64,000 nt of DNA from Haplodiscus bocki (taxonomy: Eukaryota): positions 97,960,001-98,024,000 of the forward strand of contig OZ296649.1 in NCBI GenBank assembly GCA_965655095.1, written 5' to 3'. Shown here piece by piece: positions 21,581 through 61,563 of this stretch. A program made the position numbers and the translations under genes. Each line of letters opens with the position of its first letter. Position 1 is the stretch's first letter. Under the pieces are notes generated by a model. That model saw only the letters and a list, made by a program, of their open reading frames with translations, did no database searches and was not told the DNA's origin.

Positions 21581-22018
21581 AAAAAGAACCGGGCTACGGA
21601 GTTTTTTTGCTTCACACTCAAAAACAATTTGAGAAGATGAAATGATACTTTCAAATGAAAAGTTTGCGATTTTTATGCAGAAAAACACAAATTAGGTTGA
21701 GAAAAGCTCCAATATTTATTCTCGTTTGATACGCTTTCTACGGCAAAGTTGTCACTTTTACCGATTTTCAACTTCAACTTCTTTTCCATAAAAACTTAAT
21801 TCCTTCTCAAAAAAACACAAATTTCGTACAAATTTCTTGAAATTCACTAAGTCAGTTGCATTCTATGACAAATTTGCTCCAAATTGTCTTTAACAGTTTT
21901 CAAATTCTCAACTGAATATTCCGTCAGATGGTTTCAAAGGGCAGGTAAACAGAAAAAGGGTGGCCGTTGAGTGGTCGTTTTTCCTTCCGGAATGGAAATG
22001 GAAAAATGGGGGGAGAAG
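21581..22018 (-). mobile_element. Non-autonomous Helentron-like element, family B, diverged; forms the left anchor of the macrosatellite
   Basis: Colinear with the reverse complement of 56414-56934 (CATTCTATGACAAATTTGCT...GCCGTTGAGTGG..TTTT.CTTCC...ATGG.G). The 3' end is degenerate (AAAAAGAACCGGGCTA vs ACAAGACGCCCGGCTA). Confidence 0.55.
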
Positions 22019-25000
22019 AAAACTCCATCAACACACACATTGATCAGCAAACTTCAACACAAAATGACGCCGCCAAAACCTTAGCACACAGTCAAACTTA
22101 ACTTTAATGCTGTAGTAAAATTGCAAATCATTGATGAACCGGAAGGGTACAAGTAGGAGATTGAAATCTAAAAACATTGCAAGGAATCAAATAAATATAT
22201 ACGGGAAAAAGTTTTCCGGGAACAGTGGATATTCGATAGTGTTTCAATACAAAGGAGGTGGGTGACACCAGCAAGTGGTTTTCAAAACAAAAGGGGCTGG
22301 TTCGCAAAATGCCAAAATTTTCAAATGGCAAAACTTACGAAAACAGTTCAAAACTTACGTTTCTACCCTGATATTGAGTGCCCTGGGTTTTTTTGACACG
22401 GATCGAGGACAGATAGCTTGTCCAGTTGGCTCAAAAAACAAGGTGCACTAATAAACGAGAGCAAGGATTTACACAAAGAAAGTGATTTTGGAATGTTTTG
22501 TAATCGTTGCCTCTTACTAAAAAACAGGCTCCGAGTGTTTCAGAGGTTTTCGAAACTTCGAAACCTCAGCCTTAACTGAATACTACGTTCGTTAAAGTTT
22601 TGTACCAAATTGTGTCTAGTTGTCATGGATAAGTTAACTCAAAGCAAAAATGCGTAATCTAATACGTTCAAAATTACTCAGTACCTCCAAAACTTGATGA
22701 GAAAAAGCTATTTGTGACATGCCCTTGACACCTGCTTAGCCACGTTAGCAGCGCCATCGAGTTGAGTTTCCCGGCTTCCACTTTAAGGACCACCAAATTT
22801 GTCAATATGATTTCTCAGAAAATTCCGAGTACAACATGCGAGTTTCGAGTTTTTACGAAAAAAATATCGAGGGAATATGACTAAACTGAGTTAAAGCAGT
22901 GATTATTGGAACAGAATTGGAAAAAGATTTGACTTGAAGTGACCATAGCAGCAACAATGATATTGAGATTTTTCATTTTAAAAAATTAATCACGCTTTCG
23001 ACCAATATCTCCGAAACTTTTTTCTCAAACTCTTAGTTCCACGGATCCAGATAGTTAAGAGCTTCTCCACCAATCTCCTAGTGTTGACCAAAAACTCTCT
23101 GCTTTAGGAGTTGGAAGGATACTGTAACTGCTATTGGAAATTGCTTCTTACATTTTTCTCACTTTTTGTTGTCTCAGCCAAAAACAAAACTCGAAAGGTC
23201 GAACGACTCAGAAGTTTTCTTGAAGCATTGCACAGTTCTAAGTCTGAATTTTCTCCAAATGGATCGTTTATCTATATAGCTGCTGTTAGATGGTCATTTA
23301 TTTATCTAAAAAATTAAGCTGGCAAACATTAAAATCGAAGCCGTCTAGCAAAGGAAATGACGTGAATGTGAAAAAAAGTCTATTAAGGATGACTCAAAGT
23401 CTTTAGCTAAACGAATTTAGATATTGCGTCTCTATTTTAAAAATTTCAGCATTATGATTTTCAATATCATGGCAGCTAACAACATGAAGTTATCTTTGCT
23501 ATGGTCAATCAAGCTTTAACGCATTCTTAAGATGTCAGAGTTTCAAATATCGAAAGTCTTTTTTATGACAACTGGTAATGTTCTAAACCTACCTATCGAT
23601 AAAAATTAAAGGAAGGTTTTTGCATAGAACTCTCGCATTTTCACTGAAAGTCAACAGAAACTGCTGTCGGCTACCGTGAACTTTCCAATCTTTAGAAATT
23701 GAACTTTCCAGTCTTTTTTAAATGACGTTTTGTTGTGATTTTGAATTAAATCTCTCAGTAGAACTCAAGTTTGCGGTACATTTTTGTGCCTTGACTTTTC
23801 TGGCCATTTTGGACCAAACTGTTGACATTTTAAGTTTAATCCCCATTTTTAATCCCGGCGAGCAGGAAAAAGAAGTGACTATTTATGTTGAGCCAAACAA
23901 ATGAAGCTTTCCGCGAGGAGTAAAATTCTGCACGTCAATTGGATTTTGCCAAGACTGCGTAGGGATTAAGTTGTTGCTTATTTATAGAAAAAGCAAGGCC
24001 CAAAACATCTCCGAAAAAACAGCTTTGCTTTTGTCATTTCTGATACTTTCAATCTTCATTTGTTGTCAAATTGAACTCCACGTAGTCACACTGAAACTGC
24101 TGTTGACGTTTTTTCAAGGTACTGATGGCAAATTTGCTATAATTTGTGATTAGAGGTTTTCAAATTCTGAACTGATTATTCGGTCAATTTGTTTCAATAG
24201 GCAAGGAAACAGAAAAAGTGAGCGTTGAGTGCTCAATTTTCCTTCCAGAAGAGAAATAGAAATATTGGGGAGAATGAAATTGCATCAACACATTGATCAG
24301 CAAACTTCAACACAGAATTACGTCGCAAAAACGTTAGCACACAGTCAAACTGAACTTCAATGCTGTAGTAATATTGCAAATTATTGATGAACCGGAAGGG
24401 TACAAGTAGGAGATTGAATTCTAAAAACATTGCAAGGAATCAAATATTTATATACTGGAAAAAGTTTCCCGGGAACAGTGGATATTTGATAGTGTTTCAA
24501 TACAAAGGAGGTGGGTGACACCAGCAAGTGGTTTTCAAAACATAAGGGGCTGGTTCACAATATGCCAGCTTTTTCAAATGGCAAATGTTACGAAAACAGT
24601 TGAAAACTTACGTTTCTACCTTGATATTGATGCCCTGGATTTTGTGACTCGGATCGAAGACAGATAGCTTGTGCAGTTGGCTCAAAAAACAAGGTGCACT
24701 AATAAAGGGGAGCAAGGATTTACACAAAGAACGTGATTTTGCAATGTTTTGTAATCGTTGCTTCTTACTAAAAAACAGGCTACGAGTATTTCAGTAGTTT
24801 TCATGTCTTCGAAATCTCAGCTTTAACCGAATAAAATATGGGTTAAAGCTTTGTACCAGATTGTGTCCATTTGTCATGGATACATTAACTCAAAGCAGAA
24901 ATGCGTAATCTAATATGTTCAAAAATACTCAGTACCTCCAAAACTTGATGAGAAAAAACTATTTATGACATGCCCTTGATACCTGCTTAGCCACGCCTAT

Positions 25001-28000
25001 AGCGCCACCGAGTTGAGTTTCCCGGCTTCCACTTTAAGGACCACCAAATTTGTCAATATGATTTCTCAGAAAATTCCGTGTACAACTTGCGAGTTTCGAG
25101 TTTTTGCGAAAAAAATATCGAAGGAATTTGACTGAACTGAGTTAAAGCAGTGATTATGGGAACAGAATTGGAAAAAAATTTGACTTGAAGTGACCATAGC
25201 AGCAACAAAAATATTGAGACTTTTCATTTTAAAATAATATTCAGGCTTTCGACCAATATCTCCGAAATTTTTTTTCAAAAACTTAGTTCCACGGATCTAG
25301 ATAGCTAAAAGTTTCTCCACCAATCTCCTAGTGTTGACCAACAACTCTCTGCTTTAGGAGTTAGAAGGATACTGTAACTGCTAGTGGAAATTGCTTCTTA
25401 CAGATTTTTCACTTTTTGTTGTCTCAGCCAAAAGCAAAACTCGAAAGGTCGAACGACTCAGAAGTTTTCTTGAAGCATTGCACAGTTCTAAGTCTGAATC
25501 TGCTCCAAATGGATCATTTATCCATCTAGTTGCTGTTACATGGTCATTTATTCACCTAAAAATTCAACTGGCAAACGTTCAAATTGAAGCTGTCCAGCAA
25601 AGGAAATGACGTGAATCTGAAAAAAGGTCTATTAAGGATGATTCAAAGTCTTTAGCTAAACGAATTTAGATATTGAGTCTCTATTTTAAAAATTTCAGCA
25701 TTATGATTTTCAATATCATGGCAGCTAACAACATGAAGTTATCTTTGCTACGGTCAATCAAGCTTTAACGCAATCTTAAGATGTCAGAGTTTCAAATATC
25801 GAAAGTCTTTTTTATGATAACTGGTAATGTTCTAATCCCACCTATCGATAAGAAATAAAGGAAGGTTTTTGCATACAATTCCCGCTTTTTTTACTGAAAA
25901 TCAACAGAAAGTGCTGTCGGCTACCGTGCACTTTCCAGTCTTTGGGAAATGAACTTTCTAGTCTTTTTTAAGGGACGTTTTGTTTTGCTTTTGATTTAAA
26001 TCTCTCAGTAGAACTTAAGTTTGCGGTACATTTTTGAGCCTTGACTTTTCTGGCCATTTTGGACCAAATTGTTGACATTTTAAGTTTAATCTCCATTCTT
26101 CAATCCGGCGAGCAGGAAAAAGAAGTGACTATATGTCGAGCCAAACAAATGAAGCTTTCCGCTTGGAGTAAAATTCTGCACGTCAATTGGATTTTGTCAA
26201 GACTGCGTAGGGCTTAAGTTGCTGCTTATTTATAGAAAGAGCAAGGCCTAAAACATCCTTCTCCGAAAAAACAGCTTTGCTTTTGTCGTTTCTGATACTT
26301 TCAATCTTCATGTGTTGCCAAATTGAACTCCACGTAGTCACACTGAAACTGCTGTTGTCGTTTTTTTCAAGGTACTGATGGCAAATTTGCTATAAATTGT
26401 GATTAGAGGTTTTCAAATTCTGAACTGAGTTTTCGGTCAATTTGTTTCAATAGGCAAAGAAACAGAAAAAGTGAGCGTTGAGTTCTCAATTTTCCTTCCA
26501 GAAGAAAAATAGAAATATCGGGGAGAATGAAATTGCATCAACACATTGATCAGCAACTTTCAACACAGAATGACGCCGCCAAAACGTTGGCACACAGTCA
26601 AACTGAACTTCATTGCTGTAGTAATATTGCAAATTTTTGATGAACCGGAAGCGTACAAGTAGGCGATTGAATTCTAAAAATATTGCAAGCATAAAAATAA
26701 AAATATACAGGAAAAGGTTTCCCGGGAACAGTGGATATTTGATAGTGTTTCAATACAAAGGAGGTGGGTGACACCAGCAAGTGGTTTTCAAAACATAAGG
26801 GGCTGGTTCACAATATGCCAGCTTTTTCAAATGGCAAATGTTACGAAAACAGTTGAAAACTTACGTTTCTACCTTGATATTGATGCCCTGGATTTTTGTG
26901 ACTCGGATCGAAGACAGATAGCTTGTGCATTTGGCTCAAAAAACAAGGTGCACTAATAAACGGGAGCAAGGATTTACACAAAGGACGTGATTTTGGATTG
27001 ATTTGTAATCGTTGCTTCTTACTAAAAAACAGGCTACGAGTATTTCAGTGGTTTTTATGTCTTCGAAACCTCAGCTTTAACCGAATAAAATTTTGGTTAA
27101 AGCTTTGTACCAGATTGTGTCCACTTGTATTGGATACGTTAACTCGAAGCAGAAATGCGTAATCTAATATGTTCAAAATTACTCAGTACCTCCAAAACTT
27201 GATGAGAAAAAACTGTTTATGACATGCCCTTGACACCTGCTTAGCCACGCTAGCAGCGCTATCGAGTTGAATATCCTGGCTTCCACTTTAAAGACCACCA
27301 ATTTTGTCAATATGATTTCTCAGAAAATTCCGTGTACAACATGCGAGTTTTGAGTTTTTACGAAACAAAATATCGAGGGATTTTGACTAAACTGAGTTAA
27401 AGCAGTGATTATTGGAACAGAATTGGAAACAGATTTGACTTGAAGTGACCATAGCAGCAACAATGATGATGAGTTTTTTCATTTTAAAAAAATATTCACG
27501 CTTTCGACCAATATCTCCGAAACTTTTTTCTCAAACTCTTAGTTCCACGGATCCAGATAGTTAAAAGCTTCTCCACCAATCTCCTAGTGTTGACCAACAA
27601 CTCTGCTTTAGGAGTTAGAAGGATACTGTAACTGCTATTGAAAATTGTTTCTTACAGATTTTTCACTTTTTGTTGTCTCAGCCAAAAACAAAACTCGAAA
27701 GGTCGAACGACTCAGAAATTTTCTTGAAGCATTGCACAGTTCTAAGTCTGAATCTGCACCAAATGGATCATTTATCCATCTAGTTGCTGTTAGATGGTCA
27801 TTTATTCACCTAAAAAATTCAACTGGCAAACATTTAAATCGAAGCCGTCCAGCAAAGGAAATGACGTGAATCTGGAAAAAGTCTATGAAGGATGTTCATA
27901 GTTTTTAGCTAAATGAATTTAGATATTGCGTCTCTATTTTAAAAATTTCAGCATTATGATTTTCAATATCATGGCAGCTAACAACATGAAGTTATCTTTG

Positions 28001-31000
28001 CTACGGTCAATCAAGATTTAACGCATTGTTAGGATGTCCGAGTTTCAAGTATCGAAAGTCTTTTTTATGATAACTGTTAATGTTCTAATCCCACCTATCG
28101 GTAAAAACTAAAGGAAGGTTTTTGCATACAATTCCCGCTTTTTTACTGAAAGTCAACAGAAAGTGCTGTCGGCTACTGTGCACTTTCGAGTCTTTGGAAA
28201 ATGAACTTTCCAGTCTTTTTTAAATGTCCTTTTGTTTTGCTTTTGAATTAAATCTCTCAGTAGAACTTAAGTTTGCGGTAAAGTTTTGAGCCTTGACTTT
28301 TCTGGCCATTTTGGTCCAAATTGTTGACATTTTAAGTTTAATCTCCATTTTTCAATCCGGCGAGCAGGAAAAAAAGTGACTGTTTGTCGAGCCAAACAAA
28401 TGAAGCTTTCCGCGTGGAGTAAAGTTCTGCACGTCAATTGGATTTTGCCAAGATTGCGTAGGGCTTAAGTTGTTGCCTATTTATAGAAAGAGCAAGGCCC
28501 AAAACAACCTTCTCCGAAAAAACAGCTTTGCTTTTGTCGTTTCTGATACTTTCAATTTTCAGGTGTTGCCAAATTGAACTCCACGTAGTCACACTGAAAC
28601 TGCTGTTGACGTTTTTTCAAGGTACTGATGGCAAACTTGCTAAAATTTGTGATTAGAGGTTTTTAAACTCTGAACTGATTATTCGGTCAATTTGTTTCAA
28701 TAGGCAAGGAAACAGAAAAAGTGAGCGTTGAGTGCTCAATTTTCCTTCCAGAAGAGAAATAGAAATATTGGGGGAGAATGAAATTGCATCAACACATTGA
28801 TCAGCTAGCTTCTACACAGAATGACACCGCCAAAACTTTGACACACAGTCAAACTGAACTTCAATGCTGTAGTAATATTGCAAATCATTGATGAACCGGA
28901 AGGGTACAAGTAGCAGATTGAATTCTAAAAACATTGCAAGGAATCAAATTATTATATACAGGAAAAAGTTTCCCGGGAAAAGTGGATATTTGATAGTCTT
29001 TCAATATAAACAAAGGAAGTGGGTGACACCAGCAATAGGTTTTCAAAACATAAGGGGCTGGTTCACAATATGTCAGTTTTTTCAACTGGCAAAACTCACG
29101 AAAACAGTTCAAAGCTTACGTTTCTACCCTGATATTGAGTGCCCTGGGTTTTTTTACTCGGATCGAGGACAGATAGCTTGTGCAGTTGGCTCAAAAAACA
29201 AGATGCACGAATAAACGGGAGCGAGGATTTACACAAAGGACGTGACTTTGGAATGTTTTCTAATCGTTATTATTCTTACTAAAAAACAGGCTCCGAGTGT
29301 TTCAGCGGATTTTGAATCTTCGAAACCCCAGCTTTCACCGAAGACTATATTGGTTAAAGTTTTGTACCAGATTGTGTCCGGCTGTCATGGATAGGTCAGC
29401 TCAAAGCAGAAACAGAAAATCTAATACGTCCAAAAAAACTAAGTTTCTCCAAAACTTGGTGATAAAAAATTGATTATAACATCCCCATGACACACGCTGA
29501 GCCACGCTATCAGCGCCACCGAGTTGAATTTCCTGGCTTCCACTTTAAAGACCACCAAATTCGTCAGTATGATTTCTCAGAAAATTCCGTGTACAACTTG
29601 CGAGTTTCGAGTTTTTGCGAAAAAAATATCAAAGGAATTTGATTGAACTGACTTAAAGCAGTGATTATGGGAACAGAATTGGAAAAAAATTTGACTTGAA
29701 GTGACCATAGCAGCAACAATGATATTGAGATTTTTCATTTTAAAAAATTAATCACGCTTTCGACCAATATCTCCGAAACTTTTTTCTCAAACTCTTAGTT
29801 CCACGGATCCAGATAGTTAAAAGCTTCTCCACCAATCTCCTAGTGTTGACCAAAAACTCTCTGCTTTAGGAGTTAGAAGGATACTGTAACTGCTATTGGA
29901 AATTGCTTCTTACATTTTTCTCACTTTTTGTTGTCTCAGCCAAAAACAAAACTCGAAAGGTCGAACGACTCAGAAGTTTTCTTGAAGCATTGCACAGTTC
30001 TAAGTCTGAATTTTCTCCAAATGGATCGTTTATCTATATAGCTGCTGTTAGATGGTCATTTATTTATCTAAAAAATTAAGCTGGCAAACATTAAAATCGA
30101 AGCCGTCTAGCAAAGGAAATGACGTGAATGTGAAAAAAAGTCTATTAAGGATGACTCAAAGTCTTTAGCTAAACGAATTTAGATATTGCGTCTCTATTTT
30201 AAAAATTTCAGCATTATGATTTTCAATATCATGGCAGCTAACAACATGAAGTTATCTTTGCTATGGTCAATCAAGCTTTAACGCATTCTTAAGATGTCAG
30301 AGTTCAAAATATCGAAAATCTTTTTGATGATAACTGGTAATGTTCTAATCCTACCTATCGATAAAAACTAAAGGAAGGTTTTTGCAAAGAGTTCTCGCAT
30401 TTTCCCTGAAAGTCAACAGAAACTGCTGTCGGCTACCGTGAACTTTCCAATCTTTAGAAATTGAACTTTCCAGTCTTTTTTATATGACGTTTTGTTGTGA
30501 TTTTGAATTAAATCTCTCAGTAGAACTCAAGTTTGCGGTACATTTTTGAGCCTTGACTTTTGTGGCCATTTTGGACCAAATTGTTGACATTTTAAGTTTA
30601 ATCTCCTTTTTTCAATCCGGCGAGCAGGAAAAGAAGTGACTATATGTCGAGCCAAACAAATGAAGGTTTCCGCGTGGAGTAAAGTTCTGCACGTCAATTG
30701 GATTTTGCCAAGACTGCGTAGGGCTCAAGTTGTTGCTTATTTATAGAAAGAGCAAGGCCCAAAACAACATTCTCCGAAAAAACAGCTTTGCTTTTGTCGT
30801 TTCTGATACTTTCAATTTTCAGGTGTTGCCAATTCGAACTCCACGTAGTCACATTGAAACTGCTGTTGACGTTTTTTCAAGGTACTGATGGCAAATTTGC
30901 TATAAATTGTGATTAGAGGTTTTCAAACTCTGAACTGATTATTCGGTCAATTTGTTTCAATAGGCAAGGAATTAGAAAAAGTGAGCGTTGAGTGCTCAAT

Positions 31001-34000
31001 TTTCCTTCCAGAAGAGAAAAAGAAAAATTGGGGGAGAATGAAATTGCATTAACACATTGATCAGCAAGCTTCAACACAGAATGACACCGCCAAAACGTTG
31101 ACACACAGTCAAACTGAACTTCAATGCTGTAGTAATATTGCAAATCATTGATGAACCGGAAGGGTACAAGTAGGAGATTGAATTCTAAAAACATTGCAAG
31201 GAATCAATTAAATATATACAGGAAAAAGTTTCTCGGGAAAAGTGGATATTTGATAGTCTTTCAATACAAACAAAGGAAGTGGGTGACACCAGCAATAGGT
31301 TTTCAGAACGTATGGGGCTGGTTCACAATATGCCAGTTTTTTCAAATGGCAAAACTCACGAAAACAGTTCAAATTTTACGTTTCTACCCTGATATTGAGT
31401 GCCCTGGTTTTTTTTTGACTCGGATCGAGGACAGATATCTTGTGCAGTTGGCTCAAAAAACAAGGTGCACTAATAAACGGGAGCAAGGATTTACACAAAG
31501 GACGGGATTTGGAATGTTTTCTAATCGTTGCTTGTTACTAAAATACAGGCTCCGAGTGTTTCAGTGGTTTTGAATCTTCGAAACCTCAGCTTTAACCGAA
31601 GACTATATTGGTTAAAGTTTTGTACCAGACTGTGTCCAGCTGTCATGGATAGGTCAGCTCAAAGCAGAAACAGAAAATCTAATACGTCCAAAAAAACTAA
31701 ATTTCTCCAAAACTGGGTGATAAAAAATTGATTATAACATCCCCATGACACATGCTGAGCCACGCTATCAGCGCAACCGAGTTGTATTTTCCGGGCTTGC
31801 TCTTTAGGGCCCACCAATTTTTTCAATTTGATTTTTCAGAAAGTTCTGGTTACATATTGCAAAATCAGAGGTTTTACGAAAAAAAGGAGGGAATATGGCA
31901 AACCTGAATCAAAGCAGTGATTATTGGAACATAGTTTGAAAAAATTAGACTTGAACTGACCATAGCAGCAACAATGATATTGAGAATTTTCATTTTAAAA
32001 TATTATTCACGTTTTCAGTCAATATCTCCAAAACTTTATAATTCAAACTCCTAGTGCTACGGATCCAGATAGTGAAAACTTTCTCCACCAGTCCCCTAGT
32101 GTTGACCAACAACTCTCTGCTTGAGTAGTTAGGAAGATACTATAATTGCTATTGGAACTTGTTTCTCACGTCATTTTGTCTTTTTATTGTCCCAGCCGAA
32201 ATCAAAACCCGGAAAGTCGCACAACTTAGATGTTTTCTTGAAGCATTACCCACTTGTAACTCTGAAACTGCTCCAGTTGGATCATTCAACCATCTAGTTG
32301 GTGTTAAAGGGTTATGTAATAACCTGGAAAGATAAACCGGCACACATTGAAATCGAAGCCGTCCAACAAATTAAATGACCTGATTCTGGAAAAAATTGAT
32401 ATAAAGATGACTCAGAATCTTTTGCTAAACGAACGTTGATATTTAGGCTCTTTTTTAAATTTTTCAGGATGATGATTATCAATATCGTGGAAAAGAACAA
32501 CATGAAGTTATTTTTGCTACAGTCAATCAAGCTTTAACGCACTCTTAAGATGGCAGAATTCCAAATATCAAAAGTCTGTTGATAAACACTGGAAATCTTC
32601 TAATCCTAACTATCGATAAAAACTAAATGAATGGTCTTGCGTACAGTTCGCGCATATTTACTTGAAGTGAACAAAAACTGCCGTGGACCACTGTGAATTA
32701 TTTGCAATTGTTTACACTCTAGAAGTTTTCATTCTTCAATGTTTTCAATCAGATCATTAAATTACAATTTTCAATGACCAAAACTCTGTTCTCAGTACTT
32801 TTGCCCTGAACAACAAAATAAACGCACGTTATCTCCGTTAAAAATTTGTTTTCAGAAGTTTTCCAAAAATAGTTTTTTTGGACACACAGCCAAAAACGAT
32901 TATTGGCAGAACTACTCCGCGGAAACATTTCCACTAATTTTACACAAGCAGCGAAAAAGAACAGCGACCCATCTTATTTTCTGTCAACTTTCTCGCAGTT
33001 TCTCACAAGTAAACTTTGAATACTTTGTTAAAAAAATAAATCAATAGAGATGAGTTTGTCCTAACCTCGAACTTTAACAAAACTTTGCCATTTTACAGCA
33101 AAAAATTAAGAACGATAATATTCTACAACAGTTTGATGAAGGCCGCGAATTCAAAACTAAACTACTTACTGAAGAAAAAAAAGTTTCTCTCAGAGATTAA
33201 CTTTTCTATTAGAAAAACTACCCTAAAATTATGAAATGGTAGCAAAATCATCTGCACTATGGAACGATAGTGTTGTGCACAGTGACGATGACAAAAATAA
33301 TGATGAAAACTTCGCACACAAGTAGAAACGTAGACCATCAGAGCACAAGTGCTAAAAACTGCCGATAACCGGTATCAATTCGAAACTAAAACAATACATT
33401 ACCGGTAAGAAACTGATCTGGTAGGTATCTGCTCAGAATAAAAAACCCCACAAAAACAATCAACAACTTCCATCGTTGACATCGATCCAGAGAAAGTCAT
33501 AAATTTTTCTAAGTCCATTGTTCTGGATCTCATAAACGGGTTATTGTTACAAAATCACAAATCTGGGCTGAGTTGAAAGATCAAAGAACTGAAAAGTCTC
33601 GAATAACAAGTCAACTTTTACACGAGGCAAGGCATTAAATCTTTGTTCTGCCCCCTTCGAAGTTTCAGAAAATGAACATTCCAGTCCTTACTAAACAAAA
33701 TTTTATTTCGCTTTTGATTTAAATCTCTCAGTAGGATTCAAGTTTGCGGTACATTTTTGTGCCTTGATTTTCTGGCCATTTTGGACCAAAAAGCTGACAT
33801 TTCAAGTTTAATCTCCTTTTTTCAATCCGGCGAGAAGGAAAAGAAGTGACTATATGTCGAGCCAAACAAATGAAGGTTTCCGCGTGGAGTAAAATTCTGC
33901 ACCTCAATTGGATTTTGCCAAGACTGCGTAGGGCTTAAGTTGTTGCTTATTTATAGAAAAAGCAAGGCCCAAAACATCCTTCTCCGAAAACAGCTTTGTT

Positions 34001-46000: not shown

Positions 46001-49000
46001 TCCTAGTGCCACGGACCCAGATAATTGAATCTTTCTCCACCAATCCCCTAGTGTTGACCAACAACTCTCTGTTTGAGAGTTAGGAGGATACTGTAATTGC
46101 TATTGGAAAATGCTTCTCACCGACTTTTCTTTTTCTTGTTATGCCAGCCGAAAACAAAACTTGAAAGGTCGAACGACTCAGAAGTTTTCTTCAAGCATTA
46201 CACAATTCTATGTCTGAAGCTGCTGCAGTTGGATCATTTATCTGTTTAGTTGCTGTTAAATGGTCATATATTCACCTAAAAAACAAAACCGGCAAACAAT
46301 AAAATCGAAGCCGTCAAGCAAACGAAATGACGTGAATCTGAAAAAAGGCCTAATAAAGATGACTCAAAATCTTTTGATAAAAATGTTTCGTTATTGCGTC
46401 TCGTCATTTTAATCCTTAGGATGATGATTCTCAATATCATGGGAACTAACAACACGAAGTTATTTTTGCTACGATCAATCAAACTTTAACGCACTCTTAA
46501 GATGACAGAGTTCCAGATATCAAAAGTCTTTTTTTTAATCATAATTGGAAATGTTCTAATCCTAACTATCGATAAAAACTAAAAGCATGTTTTTGCTTAC
46601 AATTCTCGCAAATTTACTGATAATGAACAGAAACTGCTACTGGCTACCGTGAACTAGTTGCTTTTGTTTACATTCTAGAAAATTTTATTCCTTTGGTTTT
46701 TGAATCAGGTTTTCAAAATGGAAATCTCGATGACCACAAGTCTATTCTCAGTATTTTTGCCCTGAACGACGAAATAAACCCACGTTATCTCCGTTAATGT
46801 AATATTTTCAAGATTTTTCCAAAAAAAATTTTTTTGGACACACAGCCAAAAATGAAAGTTGGCAGAAACGCTCCACAGCGACGTTTCCACTAAAATATTA
46901 CAAAAGCAACGAAAAATACAGCAACCCATCCTAGTTTCTGTTAACTTTGTTGCAAATTCTTGCAAGGAACCTCTGAAATTTTTATAAAAAAAAGTCATCA
47001 GAGATGAGTTGATCACAAACTTGAACTTTAATAAAAGTTTGCCATTTCACAGCAAAAAATCAAAAACGATATTGTTCTACAACACTTTGATAAAGGCCGA
47101 CAAAAAAACTAAAACAGTTACTGAAGAAAAAAGTTTCTCTCAGAGATTAACTCTCCATTAAAAAAAACTACCCTAAAATTATGAAATGGTAGCAAAATCA
47201 TCTGCACTATGGAACGATAGTGTTGTGCACAGTGACGATGACAAAAATGTTGATGAAAGCTTCGCACACAAGCAGAAACGCAGACCTTCAGAGCAGAACT
47301 GCTAAAAGTTGCTGACAACCGGTAAAAATTCGAAACTAAAATTTTACATTACCTGTAAGAAACTGATCTGGTAGATATCTCCTCAGAATTTTAAACCCCA
47401 CAAAAACAATCAAGAACTTCCATCGATGACATCGATCAAGAAAAAAATATAAGTTTTTTAAGTCCGTTGTTCTGGATCTCATAAACGAGTTATTGTTATA
47501 AAACCACAAGTCCGGGGTGAGTTGAAAGATCAAAGAACTGAAAAGTCTCGAATAACAAGTCATCTTTTACACGAGGCAAAGCATTAAATCCCTGTTCTGC
47601 CCCCTTCGAAGTTTTAGAAAATGAACATTGCAGTCTTTATTAAACGAAGTTTTGTTTTGCTTTTGAATTAAATCTCTCAGTAGGATTCAAGTTTGCCATA
47701 TATTTTTGTGCCTTGACTTTTCTGGCCATTTTGGACCAAAGTGCTGACATTTCAAGTTTAATCTCCATTTTAAACCAACGAGCAGGAAAAGGAAGTGACT
47801 TTATATCAAGCCAAACAAATGAATCTTTCCGTGTAGACTAAAAATCTGCACCTCAATTGGATCTGGCCTTGACTGCGTAGGGCTTAAGTTGTCGCTTGTT
47901 TATTGTAAAAACAAGGCCCAAAACATTCATCTCCGAAAAAACTGCTTTGTTTTTGTCGTTTCTTGTACTTTTAATCTTCATGTGTTGCCAAATCTAACTC
48001 CACGTAGTCTCACCGAAACTGCTGTTGAAGTTGCTTCAAGGTACTGATGGCAATTTGGCTATAATTTGTGATTAGATGTTTTCAAATCGTCAACTGAACT
48101 TTCGGTCAAGTTGTTTCAATGGGCAGGTAAACAAGAAAAGTGAGCGTTGAGTGGTTAATTTTTCTTCTAAAATAGAAAGAGAAAAAGGGGGGAGATAGAA
48201 ATTGCATCAACACATTGATCAGCAAACTTCAACACAGAATGATGCCGCCAGTATTTTGGTGCACAGTCAAACTGTACTTTAATGCTGCAGCAGTATTACA
48301 AATGTTTAATGAACCGGAATGTTGCAAGTAGAAGATTGAAATCTAAAAACATTGCCAGGAATCAAATAATCTTATACGGTAAAACAACATCCGGGAAAAG
48401 TGGACAGTTGGTAGTGTTTCAATATAAACAAAGGAAGTGGGTGACACCAGCAGGTGTTTTTCAAAACAAAAGGGGCCGGTTTACCACATGGCAGCTTTTT
48501 CAAATGTTAAATGTTACGATAACAGTTTAACACTTACGTTTATACCCTGATATAGAGTGCTCTGGGTTTTTGTGACTAGTATCGAGGACACATAGCTTGT
48601 GCAATTGGCTCAATTTGCAAGGTGCACTAAGAAACGGGTGCAAGGACATAAACAAAAGACGTGGTTTCGGAATGTTTTCTAACCGTTGCATCTTACTAAA
48701 AAACAAGCTCCCAGTATTTCAGTGGTTTTGGTATCTTTTAAACCTCACCTTTAACTGATTACTACATTGAAAAATCTTTTTACCAAACTGTGTCCGACCG
48801 TCATGGATACGTCAACTCAAAGCCGATACAGATAATCTAAAACGTTCAAAAATACCCAGGTTCTCCAAAACCTGGTGAGAAAAAAAGATTATTGACATCC
48901 CTTTGACAAGTGCTTAGCCACGCTAGCAGCGCTACCGAGTTGAACTTTCCTGGCTGGCCCTTTGAGGCCCACAAACTTTGTCAATATGATTTCTCAGAAA

Positions 49001-52000
49001 TTTCCGGGTACAATTTGCAAAGTCCGATGTTATACAAAAAAAACGAGGGAAAATGGCAAAACTTAGTTAGAGCAGTGATTACTGGAACAGAATTGGAAAA
49101 AATTTGACTTGAATTGACCATAGCAGCAACAATGATTTCGAGATATATCATTTTAAAAAATTGTTCAAGTTTTCTACCAATATCTCCAAAACTTTCTGTT
49201 TCAAATTCCTAGTGCTACGGATCCAGATAGTTGAATCTTTCTCCACCAATCCCCTAGTATTGACCAACAACTCTCTGTCTGAGAGTTAGGAGGATACTGT
49301 AATTGCTATTGGAAAATGCTTCTCACCGACTTTTCTTTTTTTTGTTATGCCAGCCGAAAACAAAATTCGAAAGGTCGAACGACTCAGAAGTTTTCTTCAA
49401 GCATTACACAATTCTAAGTCTGAAGCTGCTGCAGTTGGATCATTTATCTGTTTAGTTGCTGTTAACTGGTCATGTATTCACCTAAAACACTAAACCGGCA
49501 AACATTCAAAATGAAGCCGTCCTGCAAAAGAAAAGACGTGAATCTGAGAAAAGTTCTATTAAAGATCAATCAAAATCTTTTGCTAAAAGAAAGTTGATAT
49601 TGCGTCTTTATATTGTAATTTTTAGCATGATGATATTCAATATCACGGGAACTAATAAGATGATGTTATCTTTGCTAGGGTCAACCAAGCTTTAACGCAT
49701 TCTTAAGATGTCAGAGTTCCAAACATTGAAACTCATTTCTATTATAACTGGGAATGTTCTAATCCTACCTATCGATAAAAACTAAAAGCAAGTTTTTGCA
49801 TACAATTCTCGCAAATTTACTGATAATGAACAGAAACTGCTACCGGCTACCGTGAACTAGTTGCCTTTGTTTACATTCTAGAAAATTTCATTCCTTTGAA
49901 TTTTGAATCAGGTTTTTAAAATGCAAATCTCGATGACCACAAGTCTATTCTCAGTAGTTTTTCACTGAACGACGAATAAAACCCACGTTATCACCGTTAA
50001 TGTAATATTTTCAAGATTTTTCCAAAAAAAACGTTTTTTTGGACACACAGCCAAAAATGATAATTGGCAAAAACGCTCCACAGCGACGTTTCCACTAAAA
50101 TATTACAAAAGCAACGAAAAATACAGCAACCCATCCTAGTTTCTGTTGACTTTGTTGCAAATTCTTGCAAGGAACCTCTGAAACTTTTTTAAAAAATAAA
50201 AAATCATCAGAGATGAGTTAGTCACAAACTTGAACTTAATTAAAACTTTGCCATTTTACAGCGAAAAATCAAAAACGATTTTATTCTACAACACTTTGAT
50301 AAAGGCCGAAAAAAAACTAAAACACTTACTGAAAAAAAAATTTCTCTCAGAGACTAACTCCTCATTAATAAAAACTACCCTAAAAGTATGAAATGGTAGC
50401 AAAATCATCTGCACTATGGAACGATAATTGCTTTTGCTGTAATTGCTATTGGAAATTGCTTCAAATGGATTTTTCTCTTTTTGTTGTCTCAGCTAAAATT
50501 AAAACTCGAAAAGTCGAACGACTCATAATTTTTCTTGAAGCATTGCACAGTTCTAAGTCTGAATCTGCTCCGAATGGATCATTTATCTATCTAGTTGCTG
50601 TTAGATGGTCATTTCTTCATCTAAAAAATTAAACTGGCAAACATTAAAATCGAAGCCGACCAGCAAAAGAAATGACGTGAATCTGAGAAAAGGTCTATCA
50701 ATGATGACTCAAAGTCTTTAGCTAAAGGAATTTAGATATTGCGTCTCTATTTTATCAATTTCAGCATTATGATTTTCAATATCATGGCAGCTAACAACAT
50801 GAAGTTATGTTCGCTACGGTCAATCAAGCTTGAACGCATTCCTTAGATGTCAGAGTTCCAAATATCAAAAATCTTTTTTATCAAAACTGGAATTGTTCTA
50901 ACCCTACCTGTCGATAAAAACTAAAAGCATGTTTTTTGCATACAATTCTCGCATTTTTACTGAAAGTAAACAGAAACTGCTATCAGCTACCGTGAACTAA
51001 TTGCTTTTGATCCCCCTCTAGAAGTTTTCATTCTTTTGGTTATTGAATCAGATCATTCAACTGCAAATCGCAATGACCACAAATAAGTTCTCTGTATTTT
51101 TGCCCTGAACTACACAATAAACCCACGTTGTCTTCGTTAATATTTTATTTTCACGAGTTTTTCAAAAACAGTTTTCTTGGACACACAGCCAAAAATGATT
51201 ATTGGCAGAACTGCTCCGCAGACATGTTTCCACTAAAAGATTACAAAAGCAGCGGAAAACACAGCGACCCATCCTGTTTGCTCTTAACTTTCTTGCAGTT
51301 TCTTGCAAGGAACTTTTTAATATTTTTTTAAAACATAAGCCATTAGAGATGAGTTACTCACAACCTTGAGCTTTAACGAAACTTTGCCATACTTCATCGG
51401 AAAATCAAAAACGATATTCTTCTAAAACAGTTCGATGAAGGCCGCGAAGTTAGAACTAAACTACTTACTGACGAAAAAAGTTTTTCTCATAGAATAACTT
51501 TCCAATTAAAAAAACAACCCTAAATTTTTGAAATGGTAGCAAAAGCATCTGCACTATGGAACGATAGTGTTGTGCACAGTGACGATGACAAAAATAATGA
51601 TGAAAGCTTCGCACACAAACAGCAACGCAGACCATCAGAGCAGCAGTCCTAAAAGTTGCTGACAACCGGTAACAATTCGAAACTAAAATTTTACATTACT
51701 TGTAAGAAACTGATCTAGTGGATATCTCCTCAGAATTTTACACCCCACAAAAACAATCAATAACTTCCATCGAAGACATCGATCAACAAAAACATAAGTT
51801 TTTCAAGTCCGTTGTTCTGGATCGCATAAACGGGTTGTTGTTATATAACCACAAATCCGGGGTGAGTTGAAAGATCAAGGATTTGAAAAATCTCGAATAA
51901 CAGGTCAACTTTTACACGAGGCAAGGCATTAAATCCTTGTTCTGCCCCCTTCAAAGTTTTAGAAAATGAACATTGCAGTCTTTATTAAACGAAGTTTTGT

Positions 52001-55000
52001 TTTGCTTTTGAATTAAATCTCTCAGTAGGATTCAAGTTTGCGGTATATTTTTGTGCCTTGACTTTTCTGGCAATTTTGGACCAAATTGCTGACATTTCAA
52101 GTTCAATCTACATTTTAAAACCAACGAGCAGGAAAAGGAACTTACTATTTAGGTCAAGCCAAACAATTGAATCCTCCCGTGTGGACTAAAAGTCTGCACC
52201 TGAATTGCATCTGGCCTTCAGGGCTTAAGTTGTCGCTTGTTTACTGTAAAAACAAGGCCCAGAATATCCTTCTCCGAAAAAACAGCTTTGCTTTTGTCGT
52301 TTCTGATACTTTCAATTTTCTTGTGTTGCCAAGTCCAACTCCACGTAGTCACACTGAAACTGTTTTGACGTTTCTTCAAAGTACTGATGGCAATTTTGCT
52401 ATAATTGGTGATTAGAAGTTTTCAAATCGTCAACTGAATTTTTGGTCAAGTTGTTTCAATGGGCAGGTAGACAAAAAAATGAGTGTTGAGTGGTTAATTT
52501 CTCTTCTAAAATAGAAATAGAAATAGGGAGAGATAGAAATTGCATCAACACATTGACCAGCAAACTTCAACACAGAATGACGCCGCCAAAAAATTGGCAC
52601 ACAGTCAAACTGTACTTTAAGGCTGTACTAAAAATGCAAAACATTCATGAACCGGAATGTTACAAGTAGAAGATTGAAATCTAAAAACATTGCCAGGAGT
52701 CAAATAAATTTTTACGGTAAAAAGACATCCGAGAAAAGTAAACAGTTGGTAGTGTTTCAATATAAACAAAAGAAGTGGGTGGCTTTCAAAGCAGAAAGGG
52801 CTGGTTCACAACATGGCAGATTTTTCAAATGGCAAAAGTTACGAAAACAGTGCAAAACTTACGTTTTTACCCTGATATTGAGTGCCCTGGGTTTTGTGAC
52901 TCGGGTCGAGGACACATAGCTTGTACAGTTTTCTAAAAATGCAAGGTGCACGAATAAACGGGAGCACGGATTTACACAAAGTACGTGATTTTGGAAGGTT
53001 TTCTGATCGTTGCTTCTGACAAAAAATTAGGCTCCGAGTATTTCAGTGGTTTTTATATCTTTGAAACCTCAGCTTTAACCGAAAACTACATTGGTTAAAG
53101 CTTTGTACCAGAGTGTGTCCGATTGTCATGGAAACGTCAACTCAAAGCAGAAAAAGGAAACCTCATGCGTTCAAAAAAACCCAGTTTCTCCAAAACCTAG
53201 TGAGAACAATTTGTTAATGACATCCATTGGACATTTGTTTAGCCACGCTAGCAGCTCCACCAACTTGAATTCTCTTCGCTGGCTCTTTAAGGCCCACCAA
53301 ATCTGTCATTATTGTTTCTCCAAAAATTCCGGGTACAACTTGCAAATTGCGAGGTTTAACGGAAAAAAAAACGAGTGAAAATGGCAAAACTTTGTTAGAG
53401 GAATGAATATTGGAACACAATTGGAGAAAAATTAACTTGAAGTGACCATAGCAGCAACAATGATATCGTGACTTTTCATTTCAAAATAATTTTCACGTTT
53501 TCGACCAAATCTTTATATTTCAAACTCCTTGTGCCACGGTTTCAGATAGTTAAAACTTTCTCCACCAATCCCCTAGTGTTGACCAACAACTATCTGCTTT
53601 AGGAGTTAGAGAGCTACAAAAAGTGCTTTTGGAAATTGCCGCCTCCGGATTTTTGTCTTTCTGCTACCCCAGCCGAAAACAAAACTCGAAAGGTCGAACG
53701 ACTCAGAAATTTGCTTGAAGCATTTCACAATTCTATGTCTGAAACCGCTCCAGTTGGATCATTTATCTATTTAGTTGCTGTTAATTGGTCATATATTCAC
53801 CTAAAACACTAAAACGGCAAACATTCAAAATGAAGCCGTCCAGCAAAAAAAAAGACGTGAATCTGAGAAAAGTTCTATTAAAAGATGAATCAAAATCTTT
53901 TGCTAAAAGAAATTTGATACTGCTTACTATTTTCTTATATTTACTGAAAATGAACAGAAACTGCTATCGGCTACCGTGAACTAATTGCTTTTGTGTACAC
54001 TTTAGAAGTTTTCATTCTTTTGGTTTTCGAATCAGATCATTCAATTACAAATCTCGATGACCACAATTCCGTTCTGACTATTTTCGTCCTGAACGACAAA
54101 ATAAACCCACGTTATCTCCGTAATTATTTTATTTTCACGAGTTTTCCAAAAACAGTTTTTTTGGACTTACAGCCAAGAACGATCGTTGGCAAAACTGCTC
54201 CGCAGAAGCTTTTTCACTAAAATATTAAAAACCCAACGAAAAATACAGCGAGCCATCATATTTTCTGTTAACCTTCTTGCAGTTTCTTGCAAGGAACCTT
54301 TGATAATACTTTAAAAACAATAAATATATAGAGATGAGTTAGTCACAACCTTGAACTTTAACAAACCTTTGCCGTTTTACAGCGAAAAAACCAAAAACCA
54401 ATATATTCTACAAGTGTTTGATAAAGGCCGCAAAGTGAAAATAAAACTACTTACAGAAGAAAAAGTTTTTCTCATAGGTTAATTCTCCATTAAAAAAACT
54501 ACCTAAAGACATATAAAGCGGTAGCAAATTGATCTGCACTATGGAACGATGCCGTTGTGCACAGTGACGATGACGAAAATGTTGATGAAAACTCCACACA
54601 AGCAGAAAAGCAGAACATCCGATCAGAAGTGCTAAAAGTTGCTGACAACCGGTCACAATTCGAAACTAATATGCCACATTACCTGTAACCAACTGATCTG
54701 GTAGGTATCTCCTCAGAATATAGAGCCCCACAGAAACAATCAATAATTTCCATCGTTGATATCGATCAAAAAAACGTTTTGTTAATTTTAATGTCTCTTG
54801 CTCAGGATCTCATAAATGGGTTATTGTTTAAATATCACAAATCCGGGATGAGTTGAAAGATCCATGAACTGAAAAGTCCCGAACAGCACGTCTACTTTTA
54901 CACGAGGCAAGGCATCAAATCCTTGTTCTGCCCCCTTCGAAGTTTTGAAAAATGAACTTTCCAATATTTTTCTAGGTGACCTTTTAATTTGCTTTTGATT

Positions 55001-55396
55001 TAAATCTCTAAGTAGAACACAAGTTTGCGGTCCATTTTTGCGCCTTGACTTTTCTGGCCATTTTGGACCAAATTGCTCACGTTTTATTTTTAATAATTTT
55101 TTTTAAATCGGACGAGCAGGAAAACGAAGTGACTGTTTAGTGACTTTTTATGTCAAATCAAACAAATGAAGCTCTTCGCGTAGACTAAAATTCCGCACTT
55201 CAATTAGATTTTGTCAAGACTGCTTAGGTTTTAAGTTGTCGCAAAATTATTGTTTAAAGAGGCCCAAAACATCCTCTTGGAAAAAAAAACAGCTTTGATT
55301 TTGTTGTTTCTGATGCTTTCAATCATCATGTGTTGCCAAATCAAACTCCACGTAGTCACACTGAAACTGCTGCTGATGTTTTTTCAATGTACTGAT
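21865..55396 (+). repeat. Macrosatellite: 12 tandem units (short ~2.25 kb, long ~3.21 kb, plus variants)
   Basis: The junction marker ACTGATGGCAA occurs at 24121, 26374, 28624, 30884, 34092, 36342, 39551, 41800, 44835, 48043 and 52383; the array ends at ACTGATCTGCAA (55391). Unit lengths are ~2260, 2253, 2250, 2260, 3208, 2250, 3209, 2249, 3035, 3208, 4340 and 3008. Confidence 0.95.
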
Positions 55397-56300
55397 CTGC
55401 AAATTCTAACCCATTCCAGTTTTATTCCATAGGTTGGGATCAAAACAAACTTTCAAGATGAGGGTTTTTTAATAGTCTCCTTAGCTTTGAATTTCACCCA
55501 CATTTTCCCAAACACTCCCTAGGTAGATGGCTCGTTCATCAGCTTGATCAAACAACTCGTTAATTTCGAACTACCTCACATCCAAACTATTTTAGCTGAT
55601 CAGATGAAGCTGAATTTTAAACTTTTGCATATAACAAACCACTTCCTGGATCTACACTAGCTCCATTCAAAAAATTTTCCAACGAGAAACAACAGACTTT
55701 ATTGAAAATGTTTGAAAATGACGCGTGCTGAAAACGAAAACAAACTTGTTAAGGCAAAAATTGTAAGAACTAACTCCTTTTTTCTCATATGGTCAACATA
55801 GTCCAACTTGCGAAATTACAATTATAAACTAAACATTCAAATACATATACTGTGCATTTATTCCATGCAATGAACTTATTCTCGTTAACATCTTCCTATT
55901 AAGGTCCGATTGCTTTCAATATCCAGGATTAAATCATATAAATGTAAGCATCTATAAACTAGAAGATCGGACCCTTGTATTACAATTGAAAACTAAAAGA
56001 AATCCCCGTCAATTCCAAAAGACATCCTCCAATAACATGTCTCTTCGAATTTTTGCACCAATTAATAGCTGTAAGATTTGAGTTATTGTCACAGAATGGA
56101 ATTTTTCAGTTGCACAATGAAATCATCTAACCCTATTTTATTGCATTGTCACTCATTTCTAAAATCTCATTCAAGAGCAGAATTGTCCTAATTCTCCAGA
56201 AAACGTCCATATGGAAAGTTCTTGTTTCCAATTTTGCTTGACAATTGACAACAAACACGTCTACCACGTCAAATTACGCAACAAATTTCTGTCAAAATCA
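22020..56300 (+). pseudogene. Decayed LRR-ectodomain gene; its first ~3 kb is amplified in the macrosatellite and its 3' part is single-copy (55397-56300)
   Basis: Plus-strand remnants in the units: VKLNFNAVVIL, LRNLSFNRI, LLVLTNNSL and APNGSFIHLVAVRW, plus FVLND and VLDLINGL in long units only. Beyond the array: DGSFISL, LNVSIYKLE and LSQNGIFQLHNEI (56086-56124). All copies carry stops and frameshifts. Confidence 0.55.
30884..41799 (+). repeat. Higher-order repeat: two copies of a 5458-bp long+short dimer
   Basis: Identical or near-identical ORF-track peptides are offset by 5456-5459 bp (31528/36985, 32149/37606, 32749/38205, 34204/39663, 35871/41330). Confidence 0.9.
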
Positions 56301-56413
56301 AAGTGACACCGCCGGCACCTAGAGGTGGAGCCATATTTTCCAAAACTTCTGTTTTTTGAACCCCTGAGGTTTGGCCGTCCCCGAAAGCAACCTGTCACAG
56401 GTTACAAAAGTTA

Positions 56414-56934
56414 ATATTTGCGCCATATCTGAAATATGGAAGCAAAATCTTCCTCTCAACGGCTCCGTTTCTGACGTTTTTTTGTACCCGATGTTTGCCA
56501 ATTGCATTCACGCCAAATCGGCAAAATTTTTCACGCTACTGAACGTGATTTTATTTTCTGACCAAATTGTAGCAAATTTGCCGTAGAATGCGACTGAAAT
56601 AATAAGATTTTTCAAAACGTTCGATCTGGGTCTTTTTTGAAAAAGTAGATGCGTTTTTCCAAACAAACTTGAAATTTTTTCAAAATCGCTTAAGGTGGCA
56701 AATTTGCTATAAAAAATGTATAAAATGGTATTATTTCTTTGAAAGGTATTTTGGTCTTAATTATGAGATTTTTTTGGCAAAAAGTCAGAAATCTGAAATT
56801 TTTGGAAGTTGGAAAAGTTAGAAAATATGATGGAAGAAGTGTTTTTTCATGAAAAAAAAAACGTTTTAGTTTTCTTAAATGCATTCTTTACAAAAAAAGG
56901 ATGGCGGAAAATATGTAGTAGCCGGGCGTCTTGT
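56414..56934 (+). mobile_element. Non-autonomous Helentron-like element, family B
   Basis: 5' ATATTTGCGCCAT is inverted against subterminal ATGGCGGAAAATAT. It ends GCCGGGCGTCTTGT like family A but has a different internal sequence. Confidence 0.7.
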
Positions 56935-61515: not shown

Positions 61516-61563
61516 AGCATCATAGAACTACATACAGGAAAAACACCATATCCTTGTGAAATC
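61516..61563 (+). pseudogene. C2H2 zinc-finger linker remnant
   Basis: QHHRT, a 1-nt frameshift, then HTGKTPYPCEI; cf. HxRxHTGEKPYxC. Confidence 0.45.

What the first reader, a model, noticed from the sequence alone, without database searches (positions are those of the whole stretch)
21581..56300. 33-kb macrosatellite formed from a Helentron end fused to a dead LRR gene, with both ancestral breakpoints preserved
Seen: each unit starts with ~150 bp matching the 5' end of HINE family B in minus orientation, followed by 2.1-3.05 kb of LRR-like pseudogene. At the left edge the HINE continues into its full body (21581-21864); at the right edge the LRR sequence continues as unique DNA (55397-56300). 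The junction ACTGAT|GGCAAATTTGCT joins gene-side ACTGATCTGCAAATTCT to element-side CTATGACAAATTTGCT via CAAATT microhomology. Inference: one microhomology-mediated tandem duplication was followed by expansion to 12 units. Every unit retains a Helentron terminus, so Rep-mediated nicking or rolling-circle amplification could have contributed.
Basis: partly seen in the sequence, partly recalled or inferred. Interest (0 to 1): 0.7.

Follow-up and report, generated by a model that had tools for sequence, protein, structure and literature searches.

The report
Tandem array of dead transposon pieces
A 33.5-kb block of twelve head-to-tail repeats arose when a ~3.2-kb stretch was duplicated in place and then grew stepwise; the stretch runs from inside a small rolling-circle transposon to inside a dead retrotransposon, it holds no LRR gene, and this is an ordinary way for such repeats to arise.

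Summary
The array is real. It has 12 head-to-tail units at 21865-55396, each 2.25-4.34 kb and 80-99% identical to the others. All 11 internal junctions are the same, and the array occurs once in the 1.5-Gb genome.

Every unit starts at the same internal position of a HINE-type element, carrying about 150 bp of its 5' end in minus orientation. The rest of that element lies just left of the array.

The "dead LRR gene" is not supported. No LRR signal was found. The unit body is a decayed Ty3/gypsy-type retrotransposon pol on the + strand (RT, RNase H, start of integrase). The integrase remnant runs on across the right boundary into the flank. About 960 bp of each unit is unassigned.

The long form (~3.2 kb) is ancestral. 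The six short units share one 955-bp deletion and form one clade. Growth was stepwise and local, not one burst.

A role for the Helentron replication enzyme (Rep) is unlikely. The junction lies about 150 bp inside the element, the amplified DNA lies on the wrong side of its 5' end, and the terminal repeats are decayed.

This scan has described similar transposon-born, single-locus arrays on other DNA of this genome (s1-382628, s1-382588). Verdict: an ordinary member of a known kind, with an unusually readable origin.

The parts
21547..22018 (-). Resident HINE-type non-autonomous element. Its 3' body (21547-21866) lies outside the array; its 5' ~150 bp (21867-22018) is the start of unit 1. The 3' subterminal repeat is deleted.
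   Evidence: Alignment with 12 genomic copies. nhmmer hit at 21649-22018, model positions 120-494, E 8e-53. At least 621 candidate copies in the genome. subTIR check.
21865..55396 (+). Macrosatellite of 12 head-to-tail units, found at a single locus in the genome.
   Evidence: Self-BLAST, junction motif 11 times, unit table. The genome search finds the unit body only at this locus.
21865..30889 (+). Units U1-U4, short form (2250-2262 bp). They carry the shared 955-bp deletion that removes the RNase H part.
   Evidence: Unit map against U10. The short units form one clade with 96/99 support.
30890..41805 (+). Units U5 (long), U6 (short), U7 (long), U8 (short). This is a recent duplication of a 5.46-kb two-unit block: U5 and U7 are 99.3% identical, U6 and U8 96.2%.
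41806..55396 (+). Units U9-U12, long form. U9 lacks positions 337-493. U11 has an internal duplication of positions 1251-2379 (4340 bp in all). U12 lacks positions 1543-1753 and is the most diverged unit.
24125..24272 (-). Example of the HINE 5'-end fragment that opens every internal unit. The others begin at 26378, 28628, 30888, 34096, 36346, 39555, 41804, 44839, 48047 and 52387. All start at model position 340, and the subTIR is decayed (3-5 mismatches in 12).
   Evidence: nhmmer E 4e-18 to 1.5e-11. subTIR check.
44987..45948 (.). Unassigned ~960 bp of the unit (unit positions ~146-1108, shown here for U10). It matches neither the HINE nor the gypsy family and occurs nowhere else in the genome.
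45949..46120 (+). Piece homologous to the family's region upstream of pol (gag-like, no Pfam match), shown for U10. A ~3.2-kb deletion relative to family copies follows it.
   Evidence: DNA match to L038 9315-9149 and L036 890-1051. tblastn. Pfam finds nothing.
46135..46533 (+). Reverse transcriptase remnant (relative's pol residues ~557-732), shown for U10; present in the RT hits of 11 units.
   Evidence: tblastn with family pieces. The family piece matches RVT_1 below Pfam's cut-off, 27.9 vs 29.6 bits.
46511..46879 (+). RNase H remnant (pol ~726-885), shown for U10. Found only in long units, inside the 955-bp segment.
   Evidence: tblastn E down to 2e-14 in U12. The family piece scores RT_RNaseH 48.1 bits against a cut-off of 24.8.
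55150..55386 (+). Integrase remnant, end of the zinc-binding domain and start of the core (pol ~1116-1248), in the last ~250-370 bp of the unit (shown for U12).
   Evidence: tblastn E 2e-14. The family piece scores rve 42.6 bits against a cut-off of 32.6.
55397..56406 (+). Right flank: the same dead retrotransposon continues here (integrase core at 55558-55698, C-terminal part at 55929-56177). This is the preserved right parental sequence.
   Evidence: A single DNA alignment, 53918-56174 to L038 5478-3193, spans the boundary. tblastn.
56416..56934 (+). Second, nearly full HINE copy of the same family, inserted in the retrotransposon remnant.
   Evidence: nhmmer E 3e-74. Self-BLAST 21663-21886 against 56791-56563.
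57544..59555 (+). Further remnant of the same retrotransposon family to the right. Colinearity with the chromosome-1 copy runs as far as 62588.

Best explanation
The locus once held, from left to right: a HINE-type element in minus orientation, about 960 bp of unassigned DNA, and a rearranged, already dead Ty3/gypsy-type retrotransposon in plus orientation.

One tandem duplication copied a ~3.2-kb segment. That segment ran from about 150 bp inside the HINE's 5' end to a point inside the integrase remnant. The duplication created the junction ...ACTGAT|GGCAAATTTGCT... at a 2-nt shared AT next to an imperfect GCAAATT match.

The duplicate then provided long homology for repeated local duplications, which I infer were unequal sister-chromatid or homologue exchange, with some gene conversion. 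One unit lost 955 bp (the RNase H part), and that short form spread. The latest event copied a two-unit block (U5-U6 to U7-U8).

The array is non-coding, decaying DNA. The transposon pieces are passengers, not the engine.

Shown: the anatomy, both breakpoints, the single locus, the identity of the contents, and the order of the events.
Inferred: the molecular mechanism of the first join and of the later growth.
For: - Twelve units share one junction.
- Unit starts all begin at HINE model position 340, and U1's hit continues into the element body.
- The family has the anatomy given for HINEs in PMC4067079: a 12-nt subterminal inverted repeat and a 3' GCCGG...CCGGC palindrome.
- The unit body and right flank are colinear with six other decayed copies of one retrotransposon family. 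One alignment spans the right boundary.
- At protein level RT (11 units), RNase H (long units only) and integrase (10 units) hits lie on the + strand in the RT-RNase H-integrase order; together they touch every unit. The integrase core continues in the flank.
- The matching family pieces pass Pfam for RT_RNaseH and rve.
- An intact 1651-aa relative reads PR-RT-RNase H-INT.
- The 955-bp segment is present in all family copies, so the long form is ancestral.
- The short units form one clade, and the tree has strongly supported inner branches. Pairwise identity ranges from 80.4 to 99.3%.
- The unit body is found nowhere else in the genome.
- Short-read contigs from two samples bridge the left boundary. 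Word depth at the junctions is 4-9 times the flank depth (the tool warns that depth is not a copy number).
Against: - No long reads were available, so the full 33.5 kb and the exact unit count are not independently confirmed.
- About 960 bp of each unit is unexplained.
- No LTRs were found, so the retrotransposon's limits are unknown.
- The exact join lacks clean microhomology beyond AT.
- Unequal exchange cannot be told apart from replication-based re-duplication, or from circle-mediated growth of sub-blocks, by sequence alone.
Confidence: 0.8

Rival explanations
1. One reading: a Helentron end fused to a dead LRR gene.
For: The HINE part and the fusion junction are real.
Against: No LRR motif pattern in any frame. 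No LRR family at E<=1 in 23 stop-free pieces of the units and flank. The same DNA is accounted for by retrotransposon RT, RNase H and integrase, with E down to 2e-14.
Confidence: 0.03
2. Helentron Rep nicked the retained 5' ends and rolling-circle copying amplified or helped amplify the units.
For: Every unit carries a HINE 5'-end fragment. The genome encodes a Helentron with an open 2203-aa Rep-helicase-endonuclease frame.
Against: - Unit boundaries lie about 150 bp inside the element, not at its terminus.
- Copying from a 5' end proceeds into the element, leftwards here. The amplified DNA lies on the other side.
- The 5' subTIRs carry 3-5 mismatches in 12, and the resident 3' subTIR is deleted.
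- The composite is not found elsewhere in the genome.
- The unit tree is hierarchical, not a burst.
- The tested Helentron does not share this family's termini.
Confidence: 0.05
3. An extrachromosomal circle of the segment, closed at the AT/GCAAATT match, was copied by rolling-circle replication and re-integrated by homology at its source.
For: This would give the same junction and preserved edges. The route is discussed for retrotransposon-derived repeats in PMC3648361.
Against: A single burst predicts near-equal divergence among units. Observed identity is 80-99% with nested clades and neighbour similarity. At most it could explain one early step.
Confidence: 0.08
4. Assembly artefact: a collapsed or inflated repeat.
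For: No spanning long reads could be examined. U5 and U7 are 99.3% identical.
Against: Most units differ by 6-20% and carry private deletions and duplications. Independent short-read contigs match at 99% or more, bridge the left edge in two samples, and show raised depth at the junctions.
Confidence: 0.03

Closest known systems
Tandem repeats derived from Ty3/gypsy centromeric retrotransposons in maize (CRM1TR, CRM4TR; PMC3648361)
   Same: Arrays whose monomer is a fragment of a Ty3/gypsy element. The founding junction was made by illegitimate recombination, followed by local homogenisation, variant monomers and higher-order pairs.
   Different: Those monomers are LTR-UTR pieces of about 0.7-0.8 kb, at centromeres, in many copies. 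Here the piece is pol (RT-RNase H-integrase) plus unassigned DNA plus a HINE end. Units are 2.25-4.3 kb, there are 12 copies at one arm locus, and the genome is apparently an animal's.
Satellite birth from transposon double insertions (PMC5932611, title and abstract only)
   Same: A transposon-derived junction provides the first tandem dimer, which can then expand.
   Different: There the dimer comes from one element inserting into another copy of itself. Here it is a segmental duplication whose two breakpoints fall in two unrelated dead elements.
HINE/DINE-1 elements and Helentron-carried satellite-like repeats (PMC4067079; PMC7492417, title and abstract only)
   Same: The same kind of element (subTIRs, 3' palindrome, non-coding, high copy), and such elements are often associated with tandem repeats.
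   Different: Their repeats are the element's own central repeats and move with it. Here only a truncated 5' end is a passenger in a much larger, immobile unit that is not bounded by element termini.
Other single-locus arrays noted by this scan in the same genome (s1-382628, a 124-bp satellite from a junction of two transposons; s1-382588, a 133-kb array of 1.2-3.3-kb units)
   Same: Same genome, same general route: in-place duplication of decayed transposon or gene DNA, then growth.
   Different: Different sequences. This unit matches nothing outside its own locus. Here both parental edges survive.
Vertebrate macrosatellites such as D4Z4 (from my own knowledge, not tested here)
   Same: Kilobase-sized units that include retro-derived sequence, in a single or few loci.
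   Different: D4Z4 keeps an open reading frame and has chromatin roles. Nothing of that kind is shown here.

Membership tests
Macrosatellite (kb-unit tandem array) | Several head-to-tail copies of a unit of 1 kb or more with one recurring junction | tested here: met
   12 units of 2.25-4.34 kb; the junction motif occurs 11 times against 0.16 expected.
Macrosatellite (kb-unit tandem array) | Copy number and order confirmed by spanning molecules | not testable with these tools
   Only short-read contigs were on offer. They bridge the left edge and show 4-9 times the flank depth at junctions.
Helentron-associated HINE | 12-15 nt subterminal inverted repeats, the 5' one a few nt from the terminus (PMC4067079) | tested here: met
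   Genomic copies show TATTTTCCGCCC and GGGCGGAAAATA at the two ends. In the array units the repeat is decayed, with 3-5 mismatches.
Helentron-associated HINE | Short palindrome near the 3' end | tested here: met
   GCCGG...CCGGC lies between the 3' subTIR and the terminus in the copies.
Helentron-associated HINE | Non-coding, interspersed, high copy number | tested here: met
   At least 621 candidate copies. Elements are about 500 bp with no coding frame.
Helentron-associated HINE | Insertion within TT or T-rich sites | tested here: inconclusive
   Flanks are A/T-rich, but the termini were not resolved to the base.
Helentron-associated HINE | An autonomous Helentron sharing the termini | tested here: inconclusive
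   A Rep-PIF1-endonuclease frame of 2203 aa exists in the genome. It and a second Rep locus lack this family's subTIR. Other loci were not examined.
LRR protein gene (dead) | LRR profile or motif signal in some frame | tested here: not met
   No motif pattern. No LRR family at E<=1 in 23 stop-free pieces of the units and flank.
Ty3/gypsy-type LTR retrotransposon (dead copy) | RT, RNase H and integrase in that order on one strand | tested here: met
   tblastn hits in that order on the + strand across the units (RT in 11, RNase H in the 6 long units, integrase in 10), running on into the flank. The family pieces pass Pfam for RT_RNaseH and rve. An intact relative reads PR-RT-RNase H-INT.
Ty3/gypsy-type LTR retrotransposon (dead copy) | Flanking long terminal repeats | tested here: not met
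   No LTR pair was found in the window or in the 10-kb family loci. The copies are old and the loci may be too short.
Rolling-circle (Helitron/Helentron) head-to-tail arrays | Unit boundaries coincide with element termini | tested here: not met
   Every unit begins at internal model position 340 of 502 and ends in integrase-derived DNA.

The most novel reading that the evidence does not exclude
The twelve retained HINE 5' ends still act as weak entry sites for a Helentron Rep. This would make the array a hotspot for nicking, circle formation and copy-number change, so that a transposon fragment drives macrosatellite instability.
Probability: 0.04. Interest if true: 0.6.

Novelty: new member of a known kind. 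Interest (0 to 1): 0.25.

Why it matters
The locus is a clean natural record of how a kilobase-unit tandem array is born. Both parental sequences survive at the edges and the founding junction is legible. The later history (a deletion, its spread, a two-unit re-duplication) can be put in order. It could serve as a teaching case, or as a marker for copy-number variation in this species. It adds no new mechanism, and it corrects a mistaken gene call.

Tried and rejected
- Tandem Repeats Finder cannot see periods above 500 and missed the array.
- Default BLAST between the two HINE copies gave only a 35-bp match. Relaxed scoring and a profile were needed.
- A genome search with the 4.3-kb unit returned no self hits, apparently a filter effect. 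I repeated it with shorter pieces.
- LRR tests by motif count and Pfam were negative.
- The window's own pieces give no Pfam hits. The retrotransposon identity rests on closer family copies used as go-betweens.
- The LTR search failed.
- The search for the HINE's autonomous partner failed.
- The unassigned 960 bp did not match the family's upstream region.
- Rfam and tRNA scans of the window were empty.
- No RNA runs and no long reads were on offer.
Full report
**Is the array there?**
Self-comparison of the window shows a block of long direct repeats from 21865 to 55396, at 80-95% identity. Chance expectation is 0.16. This cuts the block into 12 units of 2262, 2253, 2250, 2260, 3208, 2250, 3209, 2249, 3035, 3208, 4340 and 3008 bp. 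Tandem Repeats Finder missed it only because its longest period is 500. A search of the whole 1.5-Gb assembly with a unit body finds matches only at this locus on contig C2. It is therefore a single-locus macrosatellite.

**Left edge and unit starts.**
A genome search with 21400-22200 showed an interspersed family with at least 621 candidate copies. Those copies align across the array's left boundary. I fetched 12 copies and aligned them.
- The family is about 500 bp long.
- Copies carry a 12-nt inverted pair near the two ends (TATTTTCCGCCC and GGGCGGAAAATA).
- They carry a GCCGG...CCGGC palindrome between one repeat and the terminus.
This is the anatomy given for Helentron-associated HINEs in PMC4067079. 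In the window the element lies in minus orientation at about 21547-22018.

A profile built only from the 12 outside copies hits the window as follows:
- The resident copy at 21649-22018 (E 8e-53).
- Full copies at 56416-56934 (E 3e-74) and 62968-63459.
- The start of every internal unit (E 4e-18 to 1.5e-11). Each of these hits begins at model position 340 and ends near the model's end.

So each unit opens with the same ~150-bp 5' end fragment. Only in U1 does the element continue leftwards into its body.

**What the rest of the unit is.**
All six frames have a stop about every 16-21 codons and no LRR motif pattern. 23 stop-free pieces from the units and the right flank gave no LRR family in Pfam at E<=1.

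A genome search with the right flank turned up a weak colinear match on contig C1. I fetched that locus. It is colinear with window 53672-62588 at about 57-63% identity, straight through the array's right boundary. One translated stretch looked like retroviral-type RNase H. The C1 version scores against RT_RNaseH. Used as a query it finds more than 3000 candidates in the genome, including open frames of 1651 aa. One such frame reads protease - RT - RNase H - integrase zinc domain - integrase core - Tf2-type SH3, which is a Ty3/gypsy-type pol.

Six closer, decayed family copies are colinear with the unit body and flank. One of them (L038) gives a single alignment from 53918 to 56174 across the boundary at 55396/55397. 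Stop-free pieces of these copies hit the units on the + strand in a fixed order:
- RT at unit positions ~1270-1700 (hits in 11 of the 12 units).
- RNase H only in long units.
- Integrase zinc domain and start of the core in the last ~250-370 bp (hits in 10 units).
- The rest of the integrase core in the flank at 55558-55698.
Together these hits touch every unit.

The go-between pieces themselves pass Pfam for RT_RNaseH (48.1 bits) and rve (42.6 bits). RVT_1 falls just below its cut-off. A short piece at unit positions ~1108-1282 matches the family's region upstream of pol. A ~3.2-kb deletion relative to family copies follows it. Unit positions ~146-1108 match neither family nor anything else in the genome.

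The "dead LRR gene" is therefore a dead, rearranged Ty3/gypsy-type retrotransposon plus about 960 bp of unassigned DNA.

**The junction.**
- The right parental sequence reads ...GTACTGAT|CTGCAAATTCT.
- The HINE family at the break reads ...CATTCTA(C/T)|GGCAAATTTGCTATAATTTG.
- The junctions read ...GTACTGAT|GGCAAATTTGCTATAATTTG.

Internal units keep a more family-like HINE sequence than U1 does. By homology the left breakpoint is 21866|21867. The two parents share AT just before the switch. They also share GCAAATT one or two bases after it, offset by one base. A shared 7-mer that close to two random points in this window has a chance of about 0.002.

**History of the array.**
Mapped on U10, the six short units all lack the same 955 bp (positions 1816-2770). 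U9 lacks 337-493, U12 lacks 1543-1753, and U11 repeats 1251-2379. The 955 bp is present in all family copies, so the long form is ancestral.

In a maximum-likelihood tree of shared columns:
- The short units form one clade (support 96/99).
- U5 and U7 are almost identical.
- U6 pairs with U8, U2 with U3, and U10 with U11.
- The edge unit U12 is the most diverged.

Pairwise identity runs from 80.4 to 99.3%, with a median of 84.6. This is a nested pattern in which neighbours resemble each other. It is what repeated local duplication and unequal exchange give, and it does not fit a single burst.

**Rep or rolling-circle involvement.**
The genome does hold a Helentron with an open 2203-aa frame (OTU, Rep, PIF1 helicase, endonuclease). 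Four points speak against a role here.
1. Unit boundaries are about 150 bp inside the element, not at a terminus.
2. Copying from a Helentron 5' end proceeds into the element, which here means leftwards. The amplified DNA lies on the other side.
3. The 5' subTIRs in all 12 units have 3-5 mismatches in 12, and the resident 3' subTIR is deleted.
4. The composite never moved, and the tested Helentron lacks this family's termini.

**Assembly check.**
Four short-read runs from two samples of one study hold the stretch. Their contigs bridge the left boundary (20900-22149, or 20900-22045 in the fourth run, with 0-1 differences). Word depth in the junction bins is about 4-9 times the flank depth. The tool warns that depth is not a copy number. 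No long reads and no RNA runs were on offer. The structure is therefore supported, but the exact unit count is not independently proven.

**Comparison with what is known.**
Retrotransposon-derived tandem repeats founded by illegitimate recombination are described in maize (PMC3648361). Transposon junctions as seeds of satellites are described in Drosophila (PMC5932611, seen by title and abstract). HINEs are known carriers of internal repeats (PMC4067079; PMC7492417, seen by title and abstract). This scan has already reported two other single-locus arrays on other DNA of this genome.

The present case is a further member of that kind. It is notable only because both parental edges and the order of later events are legible.

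Noticed in passing
G000:C1:147367480-147374088 (L039:5481 to L040:2089): An open 2203-aa frame with DUF6570, OTU protease, Helitron Rep, PIF1 helicase and an Exo_endo_phos endonuclease. This is a complete-looking Helentron. Its flanks do not carry the subTIR of the HINE family studied here.
   Followed up: partly
G000:C6:63144097-63150771 (L041:4098 to L042:772): A 2225-aa open frame with a UCH ubiquitin hydrolase domain ahead of DUF6570, Rep and PIF1. No endonuclease domain was seen in the tail.
   Followed up: partly
window 10860-11531 and 14518-16087: Arrays of a ~116-bp tandem repeat, bracketed by HINE end fragments (profile hits at 10869-10922, 11476-11528, 14522-14588 and 15888-16086). 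They look like HINEs with central repeats.
   Followed up: partly
window 53672-62588 and G000:C1:193526000-193540500: The dead retrotransposon copy and the chromosome-1 copy stay colinear for about 9 kb, some 3 kb beyond where other family copies stop matching (~59555). This may be a long 3' region of the element or an old segmental duplication.
   Followed up: partly
window 62968-63459 and 3245-3446: A third full copy and a partial copy of the same HINE family.
   Followed up: no
window unit positions ~146-1108 (for example 44987-45948): About 960 bp in every unit that matches no transposon family examined and nothing else in the genome. Its origin is unknown.
   Followed up: partly
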